DNA from: Haliotis cracherodii
Lineage: Eukaryota
Reading direction: 5' to 3'
Assembly (NCBI RefSeq): GCF_022045235.1
Contig: NW_027266268.1
Span: forward strand, 12,648,001-12,712,000
Length of the DNA: 64,000 nucleotides
Within the stretch, counting starts at the first letter, position 1; every line of letters begins with the position of its first letter. Of the stretch, positions 1 through 8,400 are shown piece by piece. Below the pieces are notes generated by a model, which saw only the letters and a list, made by a program, of their open reading frames with translations, did no database searches and had not been told where the DNA came from. The position numbers and the translations under genes were made by a program.

Positions 1-212
1 TCTGAGGCCTGATATGGTGAGGCTAGTGCATATGTTTGATTCACTATATCTCTATCATTATGCAAGAAATTGACTTGAAACTTGGCACATATATTCATAG
101 TAAGTGTTGAAATCTGTGTACATGTGTTTTCAGGTTGAAATATTTTTATATTTTTTTTAACGATTTTGTGTACTTTTTCGAACGTGCGATTTTATGCATG
201 TTGTTGAAATGA

Positions 213-710
213 GTGAATGCTAGCATCATAATAAGTCACATGAGTTCCAATATGGTAGAATCATGTATCACTACACCTGTCGTGCCTCGTTTGCACTTGG
301 ACAATATTAATATGGCCAACATCGAAGCCTTTTTTAAGAAATACAGAGAAATATTTGCTCGGCATTCAGCCAAAAGTGACCAACATGGCACGTGTCAAAA
401 CGGCCCATGTCACATCTGGTCAAGGGCATGTAAGCCCAGTGGATATGGGGTTTTGAGATACTATTGCCCCATATCCAACAAGTGGCGCACCGTAAATGCC
501 CATAGACTCAGCTACATCGTGCATAGGGAAGATTTCGACATAGGTGATTTGGACATCAGCCGTTTGTGCCATAATTCCAAATGCACCTATGTCGAACATC
601 TTTCTGCTGAGCCTCATAGCATTAATGCAGACAGAATAGCCTGTGTCAACAGGGATGCATGCAAAGGCCATGCGCCATATGCAGATTGCCTTTTGGCTTT
701 GAAGCTGTGA
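213..710 (+). CDS. His-Me finger / His-Cys box homing-endonuclease-like protein (first ATG at 240); predicted catalytic His replaced by Arg
   Basis: Motifs CHIW...GYG...AHRLSY. The segment SRLCHNSKCTYVEHLSAEPHSINADRIAC aligns without gaps to the I-PpoI core [29 protein letters not shown]. A C-terminal C..C.GH.P..C Zn site is present. Confidence 0.88.
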   Translation: MNASIIISHMSSNMVESCITTPVVPRLHLDNINMANIEAFFKKYREIFARHSAKSDQHGTCQNGPCHIWSRACKPSGYGVLRYYCPISNKWRTVNAHRLSYIVHREDFDIGDLDISRLCHNSKCTYVEHLSAEPHSINADRIACVNRDACKGHAPYADCLLALKL

Positions 711-903
711 AAAGAGACAACAACAAGCAAAGTAAATTATTAAGATTTTATTCATTAACTGATGTTCAGCACAGTGACAGCTGATTGTTAGCATTGCATA
801 TACAAAAAACATAGCTGTACAGCAACTGTTACCTATTTCAACTCAATTTTTTACACAAAGTCAGTCATAAGCTAGTCATTAGCTACAGTATTACTGCACA
901 TGT

Positions 904-2964
904 TCATTTCTTTGAATATGAATGGTCAGCTTGTTTGCTAAAACATGGCACAGGGTCAAGTTGACCCTTTTTGTAGTCCCCCCTCTGTTTGTCACTCAGT
1001 TTTGACTTTAAATGTTCACTAATTTTGCTCCCATGCTGTACAAGCTTTCTTTTCACAACACTGGGGCTTTTCTGGTATTCCTTGTGATAGGCAGCTTCCT
1101 TGTCCATTTGTTCAAGTGACCGCACTGCTCGACTTGATAGTTCAACACCAGAGTTTTGGCACTTGTCGATTGCTGATGTCCCGGGGCCATTGTTGAGCCT
1201 ATGAATAGTCGATGAAGCCCTCCCGATCATATTTCTTGAAAAGTTCACGTTCTTTGGCAAAGAAATACTCATTGATCGGTTCACGGCTTCACATTTCTGT
1301 GTGTCTGTGTACAGTTTCATTTGTTCGACAACTTCAACACTCAGCTTCATCTTGAGAATTTCATTCAGCAAGTGTTTATCATTGTCATCCATATTGAAAT
1401 GAGTGATTTTGTTGCAGCCGAGGAACATGGACCACTGCCACCAGCTGTTTGTTACACCGCCTCGACACACAACAGAGTACCGGGCACACCTGGAGCAGTC
1501 GCCGCTGTAGCACTTAAGGGTTGCTTCGAGCACTCTAGGTAAGATACTACGAAGTGCTTTCATGTCGCCTGCATGATCCTTCATGAGTTCTTTCAGTATC
1601 AGGCTGCACCGTGCCTTTACATCTTGACTTAGCACCTTCTTAGCCTCCAATTTCTGTGTTCGAGTAGTGCCGGGGAACATATCTGGGTTGAAATCAGCTC
1701 TGTAGCATTGCCGAAACTGTCCTTGAGCCAAGTGGGTGGGATCAGCTAGCCTCTGCACCTTCCACATAGGGTCTAACACTTTCAGAGCTTGGTCTATTCC
1801 TTCTGCAGACTTAGAATCCCCATCGGTAGTAGCATACTTAATGAGCACACCCTGTAGCGCAAGCTGATTTCCAATGTCCTCTCCCATATTGAACTCGGAG
1901 AACGGAGCGAAGGCCGACATGTTTGCTGTACAGTCTGGGTGCCCCCCTGGACACTTCACATCCATTCCTTTTCCTTTCAGCCAAGCACCAGTCCAGCACA
2001 GCTTATTCTGGAATGACGCGCCGATGATGAACTTCTTATCGGTAACAGTTTCGCAGGCTATGCCGATTGCTTGTGATGCATTCTGCCCTGGCTTCTTCCT
2101 GCTTGCTATTGTCGTTGAGTTGTATCGGCCATCCATGGCAATATTCATCTCGCATGGCTCAGTACCCCTCTTCCGATTAACTTCCTTTACCAATTCAACT
2201 TTTTCAGCCATATCCTGTGTATTCAGTTCAGTAACAGCAATAGCCACCTTGTTAGAGGTCCTCTGCATACTGCTCCTGCATGGGGGCGGAATGTCCATGT
2301 TTGCTATCAGTAACCTGGCTCTTGTGTTTCCAATAGGGGTGTCTTGAAGACCCAAGGCAAGTCCTACGTTAGGGGCTGCTGGGTTTGGTCCAGGTTTGCC
2401 TGTCTTGATTTCTTTATACAGCTTCATTTCAGGTGCTGTGAAGTCACATACAACACATTTCAGTGTCACTTTCCAGCATGCTCCCCATTTTCTCTCCTTG
2501 GCTATCTGCAGCTGAGGGTCGTCGCAGTCAGTGGATGTCGAACGATGCAGTCGCAGAGCTGTGTTCCATGCTTCGGCCACCTTTTCATTGTCAACTAGTC
2601 GCATACCCTCCAAGTCATCTTTGCTTGACTCTTGTTTCAGGTCTTGCATGCTGGCCGCAGTAGGCCGCAACAGCCTCACAGAGGTAGAGATGCCCTCACA
2701 GTCAGGTGTCGACAGCCCAGTGCCATCCAGCCTAGACTTGGTAACCAGTGAGAAGTCTTCAGCACTCATCCTAGTGACAGTCCTGGGTATCTGGGGTGGA
2801 GAGTCACTTTCTGTCTCTTCAGACTCAAGGGTGAGACCTTTGTTCCAGGGAGTGTGGCCCTTGCTGAACTGTGACTTGATTCTCTTGCGATCACCTTTCA
2901 TCGTGATTGTCTCGGACAGAACTAATGTGCTCTGAGCACAAGATGTACCTATATACCCCATCAC
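904..2964 (-). CDS. DDD/E transposase (Kolobok/Mutator-like); first ATGs at 2961 and 2901
   Basis: 686-aa uninterrupted ORF. Candidate catalytic residues lie in NIAMDGRY, YATTDGDS, RLADPTHL and TQKCEAVN. Cys clusters (CDDP..KCVVC, CSRC) are present, and a minus-strand AATAAA lies at 747-752 after the stop. Confidence 0.88.
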   Translation of the reverse strand: MMGYIGTSCAQSTLVLSETITMKGDRKRIKSQFSKGHTPWNKGLTLESEETESDSPPQIPRTVTRMSAEDFSLVTKSRLDGTGLSTPDCEGISTSVRLLRPTAASMQDLKQESSKDDLEGMRLVDNEKVAEAWNTALRLHRSTSTDCDDPQLQIAKERKWGACWKVTLKCVVCDFTAPEMKLYKEIKTGKPGPNPAAPNVGLALGLQDTPIGNTRARLLIANMDIPPPCRSSMQRTSNKVAIAVTELNTQDMAEKVELVKEVNRKRGTEPCEMNIAMDGRYNSTTIASRKKPGQNASQAIGIACETVTDKKFIIGASFQNKLCWTGAWLKGKGMDVKCPGGHPDCTANMSAFAPFSEFNMGEDIGNQLALQGVLIKYATTDGDSKSAEGIDQALKVLDPMWKVQRLADPTHLAQGQFRQCYRADFNPDMFPGTTRTQKLEAKKVLSQDVKARCSLILKELMKDHAGDMKALRSILPRVLEATLKCYSGDCSRCARYSVVCRGGVTNSWWQWSMFLGCNKITHFNMDDNDKHLLNEILKMKLSVEVVEQMKLYTDTQKCEAVNRSMSISLPKNVNFSRNMIGRASSTIHRLNNGPGTSAIDKCQNSGVELSSRAVRSLEQMDKEAAYHKEYQKSPSVVKRKLVQHGSKISEHLKSKLSDKQRGDYKKGQLDPVPCFSKQADHSYSKK

Positions 2965-3622
2965 TGTGTAATGTCAATGGCAATGACAAGCGTGTAAATG
3001 TATTAGAAACTCTCGAGACATACATATGTCTTGTGCCAGCAGTCCAAATTGCAGTTGAGCTGTACACGCAGTTTGACACCTTGTCGTGTATTGGCCTAGT
3101 GTCAGCTGAGAGTGGTCACACCTGGTGACTCGCTGCACTTGATTGGCTGTACACAGCTACCTGTCCCACCAATCATTTTAATGAGTAAAGACAGGGCTTT
3201 CATGTGAATAAAAATTTAACAGTTTCAATTTTCATTTTTGTTGAAAAATATGAACTTTAATTCAATTTTTTTGTTAAAAAATGCATGCATGTACCTTAAA
3301 ATAGGCCCCAAAAAAAGGAATTGATATACCGGACTGAAATTGATGTCTGTTGATAGTATATGTAATGACGAGACAGGAACACTTGCTTGTTTTGTCCATT
3401 TCCTTTTGGTTATGGAGTTATGGACAAATTAGAATTGCATTTGAAATGAATTCATGCCAAAAATGTACTCTCAAGTGCTATGGATGCAGCATGATTTCAA
3501 ATGACTATAAGTCAAGCTGTGTATGAGTTAGGGATTCCAAATTTTCTGTGAGCCTTCAACAGTGTATGGGCTTAGTATTGATGAAGTTTTATTTGAATTG
3601 CATACTTTTTCCTGTCCTGATA

Positions 3623-4072
3623 GGCCTCAGACCACAGTTATCCCCCCTAAGTTTTACCATGAACCGGAAGGAAAATAGGAGAATATAGTACCCTGTTTAA
3701 ATGGGCTGTTCAGCCTGTGGCAATTTTTTTGGAGTGACTTGTGATAGCTTAAATGAAAGATAAGACAATGTAGTTTGCTGTCAACTTTTTGTAAGCCCCA
3801 ATCTGTGAAGGTATTGATTCCAGCTTCCCATGATTTGACCCCAAGTTGAAGGCCGTTGTGTGTGTTTCGGCTCGAAACTTCCGGTGAGCATTGTTGACAG
3901 TGGTTACTGCGAAAGCGAGATGGTGAATGCTGGCCGAAACTTTGCATGTTAAGTGACAAGTGGCAGGTTGGTCAGCATGCAACAGGAGAACAGCCTACGA
4001 CTGATAATAATTATGGTGGGCTGTCATGTCACTGTAGATAGCAAAGAAGGAAATTAATTGTGGTCTGAGGCC
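3623..4072. repeat. Long terminal direct repeat (450 bp) of the transposon, itself bounded by inverted repeats
   Basis: GGCCTCAGACCACA(GTTA) at 3623-3640 and (TAAT)TGTGGTCTGAGGCC at 4055-4072 give a 14-bp perfect, 17/18 extended inverted repeat. The same right terminus appears at window positions 1-9. Confidence 0.85.
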
Positions 4073-4300
4073 AGATACACATGAACCCAAGTAAAGAAGG
4101 TTTTTTTTTAAGAAGTTCACTCTTCTTGTTTATTCACTTTAAAAGTTGACACAGCAACTTACAACAGGTAATTGATACAGTCTCACTTTTAAAAGTAATC
4201 AAAGTTTATTTAATTTCACTGAAGGCATGAACAATTGTGAAACTAAACTGAATTCATTCTGTTGGAGAACAGCCCCACTTCCTCTCTCATATCAATATGT

Positions 4301-4540
4301 TGGTTGGTTGGTTTGCTGTTTAATGCCGCACTCAGCAATATTCCAGCTATATGACGGCGGTCTGTAAATAATCGAGTCTGGACCAGACAATCCAGTGATT
4401 GATATCATGAACATCGATCCACGCAATTGGAATCGATGACATGCATCAACCAAGTCAGCGAGCTTGACCACCCGATCCCGACCTTTTACGGCAAGCATGG
4501 GTTGCTGAAGACCTATTCTAACCGGGAATCTTCACTGGTC
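4301..4540 (-). mobile_element. SINE-like repeat family 2 (GACCCGTGAAGAT... head, GCTGGAATATTGCTGAG..(AAAC)n tail); absent from the duplicated copy
   Basis: Homologous copies occur at ~5326-5470, 8908-9040, 19135-19381, 30818-31075, 35523-35885, 44401-44555, 48625-48760 and 59180-59426. The homologous site at ~43610 is empty. Confidence 0.75.
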
Positions 4541-4656
4541 TATTTGTATTTAAAATCCCATTCACGTCGTCTTGTGTATTGACTGAGTGAGTCGGCCAAC
4601 TTGACCAGCATTTTGTAATGTCACAGCGTGTCCTTAGTTTTGTATGGGGACATTAC

Positions 4657-4834
4657 CTTGTGTCACACCATGTTCCTCTGTTGGATGACACTGTTTGCAA
4701 TTGTTGGTGATGTAGTTGATGTTGGTGATGTTGGTGATGTGGCAGTTGCTATAATAGATGTTGTTGTTTTCGCCGACCTGCATTCCCCCCTGTTGTGTGT
4801 CCATCACTAACGTTGTCGACGGTCTGAGGGCCAT
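4657..4834 (-). CDS. First coding exon of RHIM-like-motif protein, copy A (downstream exons not in window)
   Basis: Translates MALRPSTTLVMDTQQGGMQVGENNNIYYSNCHITNITNINYITNN. AG acceptor at 4838-4837 and GTAATG donor at 4656. Paralogous to 43893-43725. Confidence 0.65.
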
Positions 4835-5015
4835 GACTCTGATAAGAAATATTCAAAAATAAGCCGAACATTCCTGCATAGTAACTGTAAACTATTTACA
4901 CATAAGTTCAGGCACCTGATGCATGCTCGTCGCCGATCTGTTCTATGACCCTAAACTATTTATACACAGTGGCGCCATCAACAAGTATACTCTTTTAGAG
5001 AAACATATTTGAAAA

Positions 5016-5175
5016 TGTTACAATCCAGGTTGTAATCGACAGTCAGGTGACCGCGAGCGGTTATATTTAGCAGTGATCTTGGTCAAAAGCGCTTAAAATA
5101 TTACATGTGCGTACTTTTCTTTCAATTCGTGTTGGGCACGCGCTGCTAAATATAGTCGCTTGCAATCACCTCAGT
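5016..5175. mobile_element. Small foldback/MITE-like element (more complete at 44076-44248)
   Basis: GGTGACCGCGAGCGGTTATATTTAGCAG is inverted relative to CTGCTAAATATAGTCGCTTGCAATCACC. Copy B also retains TGTTACAAT...ATTGTAACA ends. Confidence 0.5.
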
Positions 5176-5888
5176 GATCAAAACTCAGTTTATTATTTGG
5201 AAAATGGAGATTACTGTTAGTAATAATCATCATAGGCGAAATGTCTCGTTTTCACTTTATAAGTATAAGCACACAAGCAGCTGTCTTTGTTAATGAATCA
5301 TCGCGTTATATCGTGATTCTATTTCGACCCGTGAAGATCCGGGGTAGAATAGGTCTTCAGCAACCCATGCTTAAAAGGCGACGATGCTTGCGGTAAGAAT
5401 CGACTAACAGGATCGGGTTGTCAGGCTCGCTGACTTGGTTGATGCATGTCATGGTATCCCAATTGCGTGAAGTTTGCGCCTCTATGTTCATTACTATGGG
5501 TATCGAGGTTAAGCTTCACCCGAAGGCCATCCCAGTTCCCCTTTAATTAGTGAATGTAAGAGCTACATGACTGAGTTATCTCCCTTACACAATTCAATTT
5601 CTGTATGTAGACAGCTTGTATTAATTTCTAGGACAAAGACATTTTTCAATAGGATCAAATTCTCGTCTAAAATACAAATAAGGTAAACCAATAACGTCGG
5701 TCATGGAATATAAACAAGAAGAATATAGACGACTGGGCCACCCGCGCCCCCGAGTGTTCACGAGTTGGTGCTGCATTACCACACAAAGGGTATAACCTAC
5801 CGACATGCATTTCACATCGACAGTTTATCATTTACTCAGTGTTCCTGTTTTGTGAAATGTATGATAATGTTGGTGTTCTTTCAGAGTA

Positions 5889-6050
5889 GGGGCGGTCAGG
5901 TAGCCTAGTGCTTAAAGCATTCGCTCGCCACGCCGAAGACCCGGGTTCGATTCCCGACATGGGTACAATGTGTGAAGTCCATTTCTGGTGTCCCCCGCCA
6001 TGATATTGCTGGAATATTGCTAAAAGCGGCGTACAACCATACTCACTCAC
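5889..6050 (+). mobile_element. tRNA-derived SINE, family 1
   Basis: A box (TAGCCTAGTG) and B box (GGTTCGATTCC), a non-tRNA body and an (ACTC)n tail. Other copies lie at ~6980-7143(-), 7754-7908(-), 11854-11980(-), 39770-39938(-), 45615-45778(+), 46683-46850(-), 47453-47608(-) and 51688-51812(-). Confidence 0.85.
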
Positions 6051-8400
6051 GCACTCCTTCAGGGTAAGACTATTGACCTCCAGCTACCCGTGCCTGTGGT
6101 AAGAGGCGGCTAGGTTCATCTGGTGGTCAGGTTCGATGACTCTTATTTTCATCGAACTCCCATGTGCACCAACACTTGTATTTGATGGCGTTCCCATGAT
6201 AGATATTCATTATGAATTTGATGCTAGAACTCATGTTCGAATCTCAGATATTTCCATTCCTTATACATGTATGTGTTTTTATAAATAGACACGTTTAATC
6301 AGAATATTTCTTGCTTTCATTCTTTTCAACCTCGACCCCTCGCTCAATGATGGAGCCCGTTACTTCAAGGTCCTAACACAGTGCCTCCGTATAACATCAA
6401 AATAAAGGTCAGTGATATTGGGATGTTAAGCAGAATGCATGATAAACAATGTGTTACTTTTGTATCAATCAGTATTTAGAAAAATAAAAGTAGAAACAAT
6501 TAATTACTTTTGTGTCAATACTCATGTCAATACTCATGTCAATGCTGATCAGGAAGAACAGTTGTCCACAACACAGCAATTGGCAGTGTAGAGTTGCCTC
6601 CCTTATACTTGGAAGTAAACCTGTGATCGAGTCACTTCGGTCTTTCCTCACACATTGTAAGCTGATAGGCCGTGATATGACTGACTGTGGACAGCTGCGT
6701 TGAACCAAATTTCACTCACTCACTCACTTCTTTATACAATAGACTTTACATCATGAAATTTGGATTGGGTTTAATAAGTTTCATAGTTAGTCTTCGTTCT
6801 TATATGAACTATATAGTGGGAGTCTATCACATTATGTGTATTCAATAATGCCAGGGTATATCACAGAACGACTCGGCAGTGTCCGACAGGTAGGTACCGT
6901 TGTATACCTTCAAGGGAGATGAGAATGTCAGTTTAAAATTTCACTACTCCACTGAAGGGGTCATGATGTCATGCGCCTTGAGTAAGTGAGTGAGTATAGT
7001 TTTACGCTGCTTTTAACACTTTTCAGCAATATCACGGCGTGAGAAGCCAAAAAGGGGCTTCACTCATTGTACCTTGGTCGGGATTCGAACCTGTGCCTTC
7101 GTTGTGAGGAGTGAACGCTTTAACTACAAGGCTACCCCACCACCAACTTTCATACGCTTTAAACACGACCCCTCTATGCCTTGGAGTTTTTCGCCTTATA
7201 TCTTATATTCTATTCATCATTATATCCAGGGAGATAGGAATAGGTTTAACACAAGCATGAAGTCTCATGTCAAGAAAGTGTGAACAATACTTACACCGGT
7301 ACGTACCCCATGTATTTCTAAGACGACACTGAATGCAGATACTGGAATTATAAATGTCTCAGATTGATAAGGCGACATGTCAAATGTCTTTGTATGAACG
7401 GGTGTTGGGTCATATCCTACTGTCTGACTTCCTACTTAAAGCAATGTATTAAAGTGAATGGAACGGACAAACCAGTGACTGAAAGGACGTGCAAAGCTCC
7501 ACGTCATCGGGGCACAAAGACACTCAATGAATCAAGTCACAGAGCCTGACCACCCTATCCATGTAAGTGGACTCGTCCGACATGAATAGGATACGGGGAC
7601 AGTGTTTCTCAACATTCCAACAGGACGAAACTTTGAAGATTGTGTGGAAAATTAAAACTTATCTCAGATAAGAGTTTAGTAGCTGCTATCACTATTTAAA
7701 TAAACACAGACAGACAGACATACACATACACGCACGTGCCTCCAAACAAGATAGTGAGTGAGTGAGTATGGTTTTACGCCGATTTTAGCAATATTCCAGC
7801 AATATCACGGCGGGGGACACCAGAAATGGGCTTCACACAATGTACCTATGCCGGGAATCGAACACGGATGAGCGAACGCTTTAACCACTAGGCTACCTGA
7901 CCGCCCCGCATCCATACACATCCATACATACCGACATACATATAAATAATAATGTATGCCGAGGCGTGTAAATGTTCGGCAGTGTGTACCTGCCTTCGTA
8001 TGTTAGGACTCAATATTGACAACCCGCGAACCTAGAAGTGATATAAAGGTAAGTTATCTCCCTTTAGTTGAACAAACCATTATTTAGTCTATTTATAGAC
8101 ACAGCAAAGAACTATCTTTACAGCTTTCGTCATTTTAAGAAGGATCAAATACATGTTCGAAAAACACAGAAAACTAAAAAAACTGTACTTTTACACTGAG
8201 CACGGACATTTATATTATCATCGTCAAAGCATCAAACCACTGCGTCCATGTTATCGATGAAGACGAGGACAGACTCCCTACTCCCCTGTGGTTGACAACA
8301 TGTCGGCCTGGCGTTCCTGATATATGGTTACTTTTGCCGACCCTAGAAGACACAAGTTGCATACAGAGAGTACCATGACGCATAAGGATGATATTACTTA

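What the first reader, a model, noticed from the sequence alone, without database searches (positions are those of the whole stretch)
1..4072. Composite-like DNA transposon: DDD/E transposase plus homing-endonuclease-like gene inside long direct repeats that are themselves TIR-bounded
Seen: 3623-4072 is a 450-bp unit starting GGCCTCAGACCACA and ending TGTGGTCTGAGGCC. The window starts with the same right terminus (TCTGAGGCC), so a second direct copy should end at position 9. Between them sit an intact 686-aa DDD/E transposase (-) and a His-Cys-box nuclease (+), tail to tail. Established: this layout resembles a bacterial composite transposon (two mini-elements flanking cargo) and matches the KolobokP group (Kojima & Bao), so the class is described although this family may not be. 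Inference: four TIR ends allow whole-element, solo-repeat, circular or tandem transposition products.
Basis: partly seen in the sequence, partly recalled or inferred. Interest (0 to 1): 0.85.

Follow-up and report, generated by a model that had tools for sequence, protein, structure and literature searches.

The report
Known KolobokP transposon in black abalone
This is a real, young copy of a DNA transposon type already published in 2022 (KolobokP: a transposase gene and a homing-endonuclease-like gene between two 450-bp direct repeats that each have inverted ends), so it is a correct rediscovery and not something new.

Summary
A second 450-bp repeat (448/450 identical) ends exactly at window position 9, so the element is repeat (LTDR)-internal region (INT, 3613 bp)-repeat, 4513 bp, flanked by a 4-bp target duplication, AGAT. 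INT holds an intact 685-aa DDD/E transposase (Pfam PF20700) and, tail to tail, a His-Cys-box His-Me nuclease (PF05551; I-PpoI is the only significant PDB match).

The same genome, Haliotis cracherodii by an NCBI protein name and matching contig length, also holds:
- solo LTDRs with 4-bp duplications;
- other monomers;
- arrays (LTDR-INT)n-LTDR with n=2 and n=4;
- one LTDR-INT-INT-LTDR whose INT-INT joint keeps a single TGATA.

Every one of these features is described for KolobokP by Kojima and Bao (Mob DNA 2022, PMC9587614). Their supplement lists KolobokP-1_HaRuf from red abalone (4539 bp, LTDR 452, TIR 18). Its transposase reads nearly the same as this one. So the class, and effectively the family, are already known.

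Details specific to this genome:
- This copy alone has Arg at the nuclease's catalytic His (I-PpoI His98 position).
- Units inside arrays are 100% identical.
- Both arrays lack a target duplication.
- Four LTDR ends outside full elements carry the INT-end pentamer TGATA.

The parts
1..9 (+). Last 9 bases of the left LTDR. The whole copy is G000:C5:12647560-12648009, upstream of the window.
   Evidence: full 450-bp copy, 99.6% identical to 3623-4072, preceded by AGAT.
10..3622 (.). Internal region (INT), 3613 bp. It begins and ends with TGATA (10-14 and 3618-3622).
   Evidence: Ten full-length copies at 99% or more elsewhere. The INT-INT joint at C67:50532465-69 keeps one TGATA.
312..710 (+). 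His-Cys-box His-Me finger nuclease gene, 132 aa from the ATG at 312. The open frame runs from 213.
   Evidence: PF05551, 29.3 bits against a cut-off of 27; a profile hits only I-PpoI (E 4e-5, gap-free over 65 residues); homologues start at this Met.
561..563 (+). Codon CGT (Arg) at the position of the I-PpoI general base His98. This substitution is private to this copy.
   Evidence: All other copies, two other families in the genome and three database homologues have His (SHLCHN).
904..2961 (-). Kolobok-type DDD/E transposase gene, 685 aa, intact.
   Evidence: PF20700, E 1.9e-75; motifs D277, CCHC 322-344, TTDGD 378-382, DPTH 407-410, Cys cluster 484-499, E558; reads almost identically to KolobokP-1_HaRuf_1p.
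3623..4072 (+). Right LTDR, 450 bp, non-coding, with TIRs at 3623-3640 and 4055-4072.
   Evidence: (I15).
4073..4076 (.). Right copy of the 4-bp target-site duplication AGAT. The left copy is at C5:12647556-12647559.

Best explanation
The region is one monomer (LTDR-INT-LTDR, 4513 bp) of a young KolobokP DNA transposon. It is the Haliotis cracherodii counterpart of the published family KolobokP-1_HaRuf.

How it most likely works:
- The transposase encoded in INT recognises the 18-nt inverted ends of the 450-bp repeats.
- Pairing the outermost two ends moves the whole element, making a 4-5-bp target duplication.
- Pairing the two ends of one repeat moves or excises a 450-bp solo repeat.
- Recombination or unequal crossover between the direct repeats makes solo repeats and tandem arrays.
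- The His-Cys-box nuclease is proposed, but not shown, to cut inside the repeat or at abutted ends and so stimulate these events.

In this copy the transposase frame is intact. The nuclease carries Arg in place of the catalytic general-base His and is probably inactive.

Shown here: the anatomy, the copies, the target duplications, the arrays, the INT-INT joint and the protein family assignments. Inferred: every enzymatic step.
For: - Direct repeat pair and TIRs.
- Target duplications: C5 AGAT, C4 AGCCT, C6 ATGT, C67b ACGT. At least 8 of 11 solo repeats have a perfect 4-bp duplication. Twelve solo loci have no INT within 1.5 kb.
- Arrays at C67:13219207-13235904 (5 LTDR, 4 INT) and C34:9489564-9498137 (3 LTDR, 2 INT), and LTDR-INT-INT-LTDR at C67:50528566-50536518 with one TGATA at the joint.
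- Transposase: PF20700 and Kolobok motifs.
- Nuclease: PF05551 and I-PpoI.
- The paper describes each of these features, and lists KolobokP-1_HaRuf as 4539 bp, LTDR 452, TIR 18, TSD 3-6.
- The KolobokP-1_HaRuf_1p protein in the supplement reads nearly identically to the window ORF, and the HaRuf LTDR is alignable end to end.
- Host species: P0004 is 99% identical, named Haliotis cracherodii by NCBI, and sits on a contig of 73386740 bases, the length of C34.
Against: - Pfam labels the transposase 'Mutator-like', not Kolobok.
- Identity to the published consensus was judged by eye from an OCR'd PDF and not computed (roughly 97% for the protein, about 90% for the LTDR).
- Both tandem arrays lack the target duplication that the published models predict.
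- No evidence here for current activity, expression or circular forms.
Confidence: 0.95

Rival explanations
1. A Mutator-like (MULE) element that happens to be flanked by two insertions of an unrelated 450-bp MITE.
For: Pfam's only hit for the transposase is PF20700 'Mutator-like transposase'. Database homologues carry the same automatic name.
Against: - Target duplications are 4-5 bp, not the 8-11 bp of MULEs.
- At four independent loci the repeats and INT sit together with the duplication at the outer ends.
- The protein matches the published KolobokP-1_HaRuf transposase and has the Kolobok CCHC and second Cys cluster.
- The paper states that Kolobok is close to MuDR, P and hAT, which explains the Pfam label.
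Confidence: 0.02
2. A locally duplicated, satellite-like 4-kb tandem repeat that is not mobile as a unit. Only the 450-bp piece transposes.
For: - Arrays with a 4062-bp period and 100% identical units.
- INT ends look like a TGATA duplication around each internal repeat.
- The two arrays lack target duplications.
Against: - LTDR-INT-LTDR monomers sit at unrelated loci on C5, C4, C6 and C17, and the three with two complete outer ends (C5, C4, C6) have their own 4-5-bp duplications at those ends.
- INT encodes the transposase that fits the ends.
Confidence: 0.02
3. The direct repeats or arrays are an assembly artefact.
For: Perfect identity of units inside the arrays is also what a collapsed or over-polished assembly would give.
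Against: - The two repeats of the window copy differ at 2 positions.
- Copies at different loci differ by 9-30 substitutions in a consistent pattern.
- The same architecture is published for 228 families in many assemblies.
Confidence: 0.01

Closest known systems
KolobokP-1_HaRuf and KolobokP-1_HaRub (Kojima and Bao 2022, Mob DNA 13:24; red and blacklip abalone)
   Same: - Architecture, repeat length (452 against 450) and 18-nt TIR with the same first 14 bases.
- INT ending in TATCA/TGATA, and TSD of 4-5 bp.
- Two genes tail to tail.
- The transposase reads almost the same, and the LTDR aligns end to end.
   Different: - Different host species (H. cracherodii, not in the paper's table).
- Total length 4513 against 4539 bp.
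- LTDR about 90% alike by eye, with a variable middle part.
- This copy has Arg at the nuclease's catalytic His.
I-PpoI, a His-Cys-box homing endonuclease of a group I intron (PDB 1A73)
   Same: Gap-free match over 65 residues. It includes S97, C100, H101, N102, C105, H110, E114 and N119.
   Different: - About 25-30% identity only.
- Not inside an intron.
- Target unknown.
- His98 is Arg in this copy (His in all others).
Bacterial composite transposons (Tn5 or Tn10 type)
   Same: Two terminal modules, each bounded by inverted ends, so four ends can be used in different pairs. Solo modules also move.
   Different: - The terminal modules are non-coding.
- The transposase sits in the middle.
- The modules are always direct repeats.
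- The host is a eukaryote.
LTR retrotransposons
   Same: Long terminal direct repeats, solo repeats and occasional tandem arrays that share a repeat.
   Different: - No reverse transcriptase or integrase, and no TG..CA ends.
- The repeats are not regenerated at each insertion, so their divergence does not date the insertion.

Membership tests
KolobokP | Long terminal direct repeats of about 450 or about 660 bp at both ends | tested here: met
   450 bp at both ends, 448/450 identical.
KolobokP | Each repeat has its own short TIRs (11-18 bp), with termini 5'-RR..YY-3' | tested here: met
   18 nt, 17/18 complementary, GG..CC.
KolobokP | INT encodes a Kolobok DDD/E transposase with a CCHC finger after the first D, a C/DxxH motif, and a Cys cluster before the E | tested here: met
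   Motifs located. Near-identity to KolobokP-1_HaRuf_1p in the paper's alignment. No phylogeny was computed here.
KolobokP | A His-Me finger nuclease of the His-Cys-box group lies downstream on the opposite strand | tested here: met
   PF05551 above its cut-off. I-PpoI is the only significant PDB hit. The genes converge.
KolobokP | Target-site duplication of 3-5 bp without strong target specificity | tested here: met
   AGAT, AGCCT, ATGT and ACGT for full elements. At least 8 of 11 solo repeats have a perfect 4-bp duplication.
KolobokP | Solo LTDRs, (LTDR-INT)n-LTDR multimers, and INT-INT joints that lack one copy of the terminal 3-5-mer | tested here: met
   However, both multimers lack a TSD.
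Kolobok superfamily (classical) | TTAA target duplication and an N-terminal THAP domain | tested here: not met
   TSDs vary and no THAP hit was found. The paper reports no strong target-sequence preference for the KolobokP lineage; the N-terminal THAP domain was not checked against it.
Mutator / MULE | 8-11-bp target duplication and usually long TIRs | tested here: not met
   4-5-bp TSD and 18-nt TIR.
His-Cys-box homing endonuclease (active enzyme) | General-base His98 and metal-binding Asn119 (I-PpoI numbering) | tested here: not met
   Asn is present. His is replaced by Arg in this copy only, and the other intact copies keep His.
Bacterial composite transposon | Terminal modules are autonomous IS elements that encode the transposase | tested here: not met
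   The LTDR has no credible gene. The transposase is in INT.

The most novel reading that the evidence does not exclude
Repeats, or multi-unit segments, that leave a full element take 4-5 bp of donor flank with them and deposit it at the new site.

Evidence:
- Four LTDR ends with non-INT flanks carry the INT-terminal pentamer TGATA next to the TIR, all in the INT-consistent orientation. The six control pentamers of the same pattern gave one hit in total.
- One of the four is the outer end of the C34 array. That array shows only a 2-bp duplication.
- The other array (C67) has an 8-bp filler in place of 12 bp of target.

This would be the reciprocal product of the 1-5-bp donor footprints in the paper. 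It would support a circular or spacer-bearing intermediate, and it would show that multimers can arise or move by a route that leaves no standard target duplication.
Probability: 0.2. Interest if true: 0.4.

Novelty: already known. Interest (0 to 1): 0.15.

Why it matters
It adds little as a discovery, because the class was published in 2022 and the family is in that paper's data for two sister abalone species.

It still has modest value:
- Black abalone holds a very young set of copies: eight intact transposase frames and arrays with identical units.
- It also holds a natural nuclease variant, Arg at the catalytic His, next to His-bearing copies.
- A 2026 review still says the nuclease-driven multimer model awaits experimental confirmation, so this material could be used to test it.

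Tried and rejected
- Single-sequence search of the nuclease against PDB found nothing. The profile search worked.
- The AlphaFold model of the nuclease had mean pLDDT 48, so no fold search was run on it.
- A sensitive BLAST of INT against the array flanks found no hidden INT remnants.
- L030, first taken as a spacer-bearing solo repeat, is ambiguous. It is an old copy, and one point change in a TTAT duplication would explain it equally well.
- Diverged families at 75-86% gave no alignable LTDR in the loci held, so no conservation profile of the repeat could be made.
Paralogous empty sites for C34, the flanks of C80:6405121 and C5:35170239, and the C16 array could not be read.
Identities to it are by eye.
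Full report
**Observation**

The 450-bp unit at 3623-4072 begins with GGCCTCAGACCACAGTTA and ends with its near-perfect complement: 18-nt arms, 17/18 paired. The 14-mer terminus occurs only at these two places in the window, against 0.24 expected by chance.

A search of the window's own genome found a second direct copy at C5:12647560-12648009. The element is therefore LTDR (450) - INT (3613, window 10-3622) - LTDR (450), 4513 bp in all. AGAT lies immediately outside both ends.

**Genes**

- ORF 904-2964 (-) is intact. Its real ATG is the second codon, giving 685 aa, the same start as the published protein.
- It matches Pfam PF20700 at E 1.9e-75.
- It has the Kolobok signature string: D277 in AMDGRYN, a CCHC finger at 322-344, TTDGD at 378-382, DPTH at 407-410, a Cys cluster at 484-499 and E558 in KCEAVN.
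- ORF 213-710 (+) converges on it tail to tail. Homologues begin at the Met encoded at 312, so the nuclease is probably 132 aa.
- The nuclease passes the Pfam cut-off for PF05551.
- A profile of nine homologues hits only I-PpoI in the PDB (E 4e-5), gap-free over 65 residues. S97, C100, H101, N102, C105, H110, E114 and N119 all align.

**Other copies in the genome**

- Monomers lie on C4 (TSD AGCCT), C6 (ATGT) and C17 (right repeat truncated).
- C67:50528566-50536518 is an LTDR(deleted)-INT-INT-LTDR with TSD ACGT. Its two INTs share a single TGATA at the joint.
- Two tandem arrays exist: C67:13219207-13235904 (5 LTDR, 4 INT) and C34:9489564-9498137 (3 LTDR, 2 INT), both with a 4062-bp period.
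- At least 12 loci are solo repeats with no INT within 1.5 kb, and at least 8 of 11 with complete ends have a perfect 4-bp duplication.
- About 200 TIR matches and 271 LTDR candidates exist genome-wide.
- The transposase frame is intact in eight INT copies (C5, C4, two on C34, four on C67). It is broken in the two INT-INT units and on C17.
- Units within an array are 100% identical. The two arrays differ from each other by 9 substitutions. The window copy differs from the others by about 25 of 3613.

**Comparison with the literature**

Kojima and Bao (Mob DNA 2022, PMC9587614) describe KolobokP with exactly this anatomy:
- LTDRs of about 450 or 660 bp, with TIRs up to 18 bp and RR..YY termini;
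- TSDs of 3-5 bp;
- solo LTDRs and (LTDR-INT)n-LTDR multimers;
- INT-INT joints that hold one copy of the terminal tetramer.

Their Table S1 lists KolobokP-1_HaRuf (red abalone; 4539 bp, LTDR 452, TIR 18, TSD 3-6) and KolobokP-1_HaRub. The HaRuf LTDR starts with the same 14-mer and aligns with ours end to end, about 90% by eye. KolobokP-1_HaRuf_1p in their alignment reads almost identically to the window's transposase, with a handful of differences in an OCR'd text.

The best database homologue (P0004, 99% identical) is named Haliotis cracherodii by NCBI. It lies on a contig of 73386740 bases, the exact length of contig C34. The genome is therefore black abalone, a species not in the paper's table. 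The Pfam label 'Mutator-like' is only a label: the paper places Kolobok next to MuDR, P and hAT, and the 4-5-bp TSDs are not MULE-like.

**Mechanism**

What is shown is structural. The four ends have been used in at least three combinations (whole element, solo repeat, multi-unit arrays), and a repeat has been lost from between two INTs.

What is inferred follows the paper:
- The transposase acts on the 18-nt ends.
- Unequal crossover or recombination between the repeats makes arrays and solo repeats.
- The nuclease may stimulate this by cutting in the repeat or at abutted ends.

A 2026 review still calls this model unconfirmed. Unlike LTRs, the two repeats are copied from the donor as they are, so their 2 differences do not date the insertion.

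**Details specific to this genome**

1. I confirm this. Codon 561-563 is CGT and aligns with I-PpoI His98. It is private to this copy: all other copies, two other families in the genome and three database homologues have His. The copy also has a private Arg-to-Trp change in the transposase. This looks like ordinary decay of one copy, not a family trait.

2. Both arrays lack a standard TSD.
   - For the C67 array, a paralogous empty site held in L061 shows 12 bp of target replaced by the 8 bases AGATATTA on the right side.
   - For the C34 array, paralogue coordinates indicate only a 2-bp duplication. The leftmost repeat is preceded by GATA, the last four bases of INT.

3. A pattern search of all LTDR ends found 28 that are flanked by one of eight TRWYA pentamers.
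   - 23 are true INT joints.
   - 4 have non-INT flanks yet carry TGATA in the INT-consistent orientation: the C34 array end, C80:6405121, C5:35170239 and C6:30124916.
   - The six control pentamers gave one hit in total.

   This suggests that segments leaving a full element can carry donor-flank bases with them, which fits the donor footprints in the paper. The numbers are small, one case is ambiguous, and I could not read the other flanks.

**Limits**

- The AlphaFold model of the nuclease was too poor to use.
- Identities to the published consensus are by eye.

**Verdict**

This is a correct observation and a correct interpretation of a class that is already published. The family itself is already deposited for sister species. 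Interest is low.

Noticed in passing
G000:C16:4973493-5020106 (outside the window): At least 16 exact left-TIR 18-mers lie on one strand, spaced about 3.06-3.37 kb apart or at double that distance. This looks like a roughly 47-kb multimer of a shorter, probably non-autonomous KolobokP relative.
   Followed up: no
G000:C34:9489564-9498137 and C67:13219207-13235904: Both (LTDR-INT)n-LTDR arrays lack a target-site duplication, while the four elements with intact outer ends (three monomers and the INT-INT element) have one. One array has an INT-like GATA and the other an 8-bp filler at one end.
   Followed up: partly
G000:C80:6405121, C5:35170239, C6:30124916: LTDR ends with non-INT flanks still carry the INT-terminal pentamer TGATA directly next to the TIR.
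   Followed up: partly
window 2836-2859 (-), transposase residues 35-42: The N-terminal motif GHTPWNKG, outside the Pfam domain, recalls the short DNA-binding modules found in homing endonucleases (from memory). It was not tested.
   Followed up: no
window 4290-8000: Dense, partly inverted copies of a SINE-like repeat (GTGAGTGAGTGAGT...TTCCAGCAATAT...) lie just downstream of the element (pairs I1-I8). The same repeat flanks L030.
   Followed up: no
proteins P0079 and P0084: KolobokP-like transposases (about 41% identity) are deposited under the bacterial names Candidatus Thiodiazotropha, from symbiont MAGs. This is most likely host DNA contaminating the bins.
   Followed up: no
L058:729-1526: A long tandem array encoding (EDHVTL)n lies next to a distant nuclease homologue on C12.
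   Followed up: no
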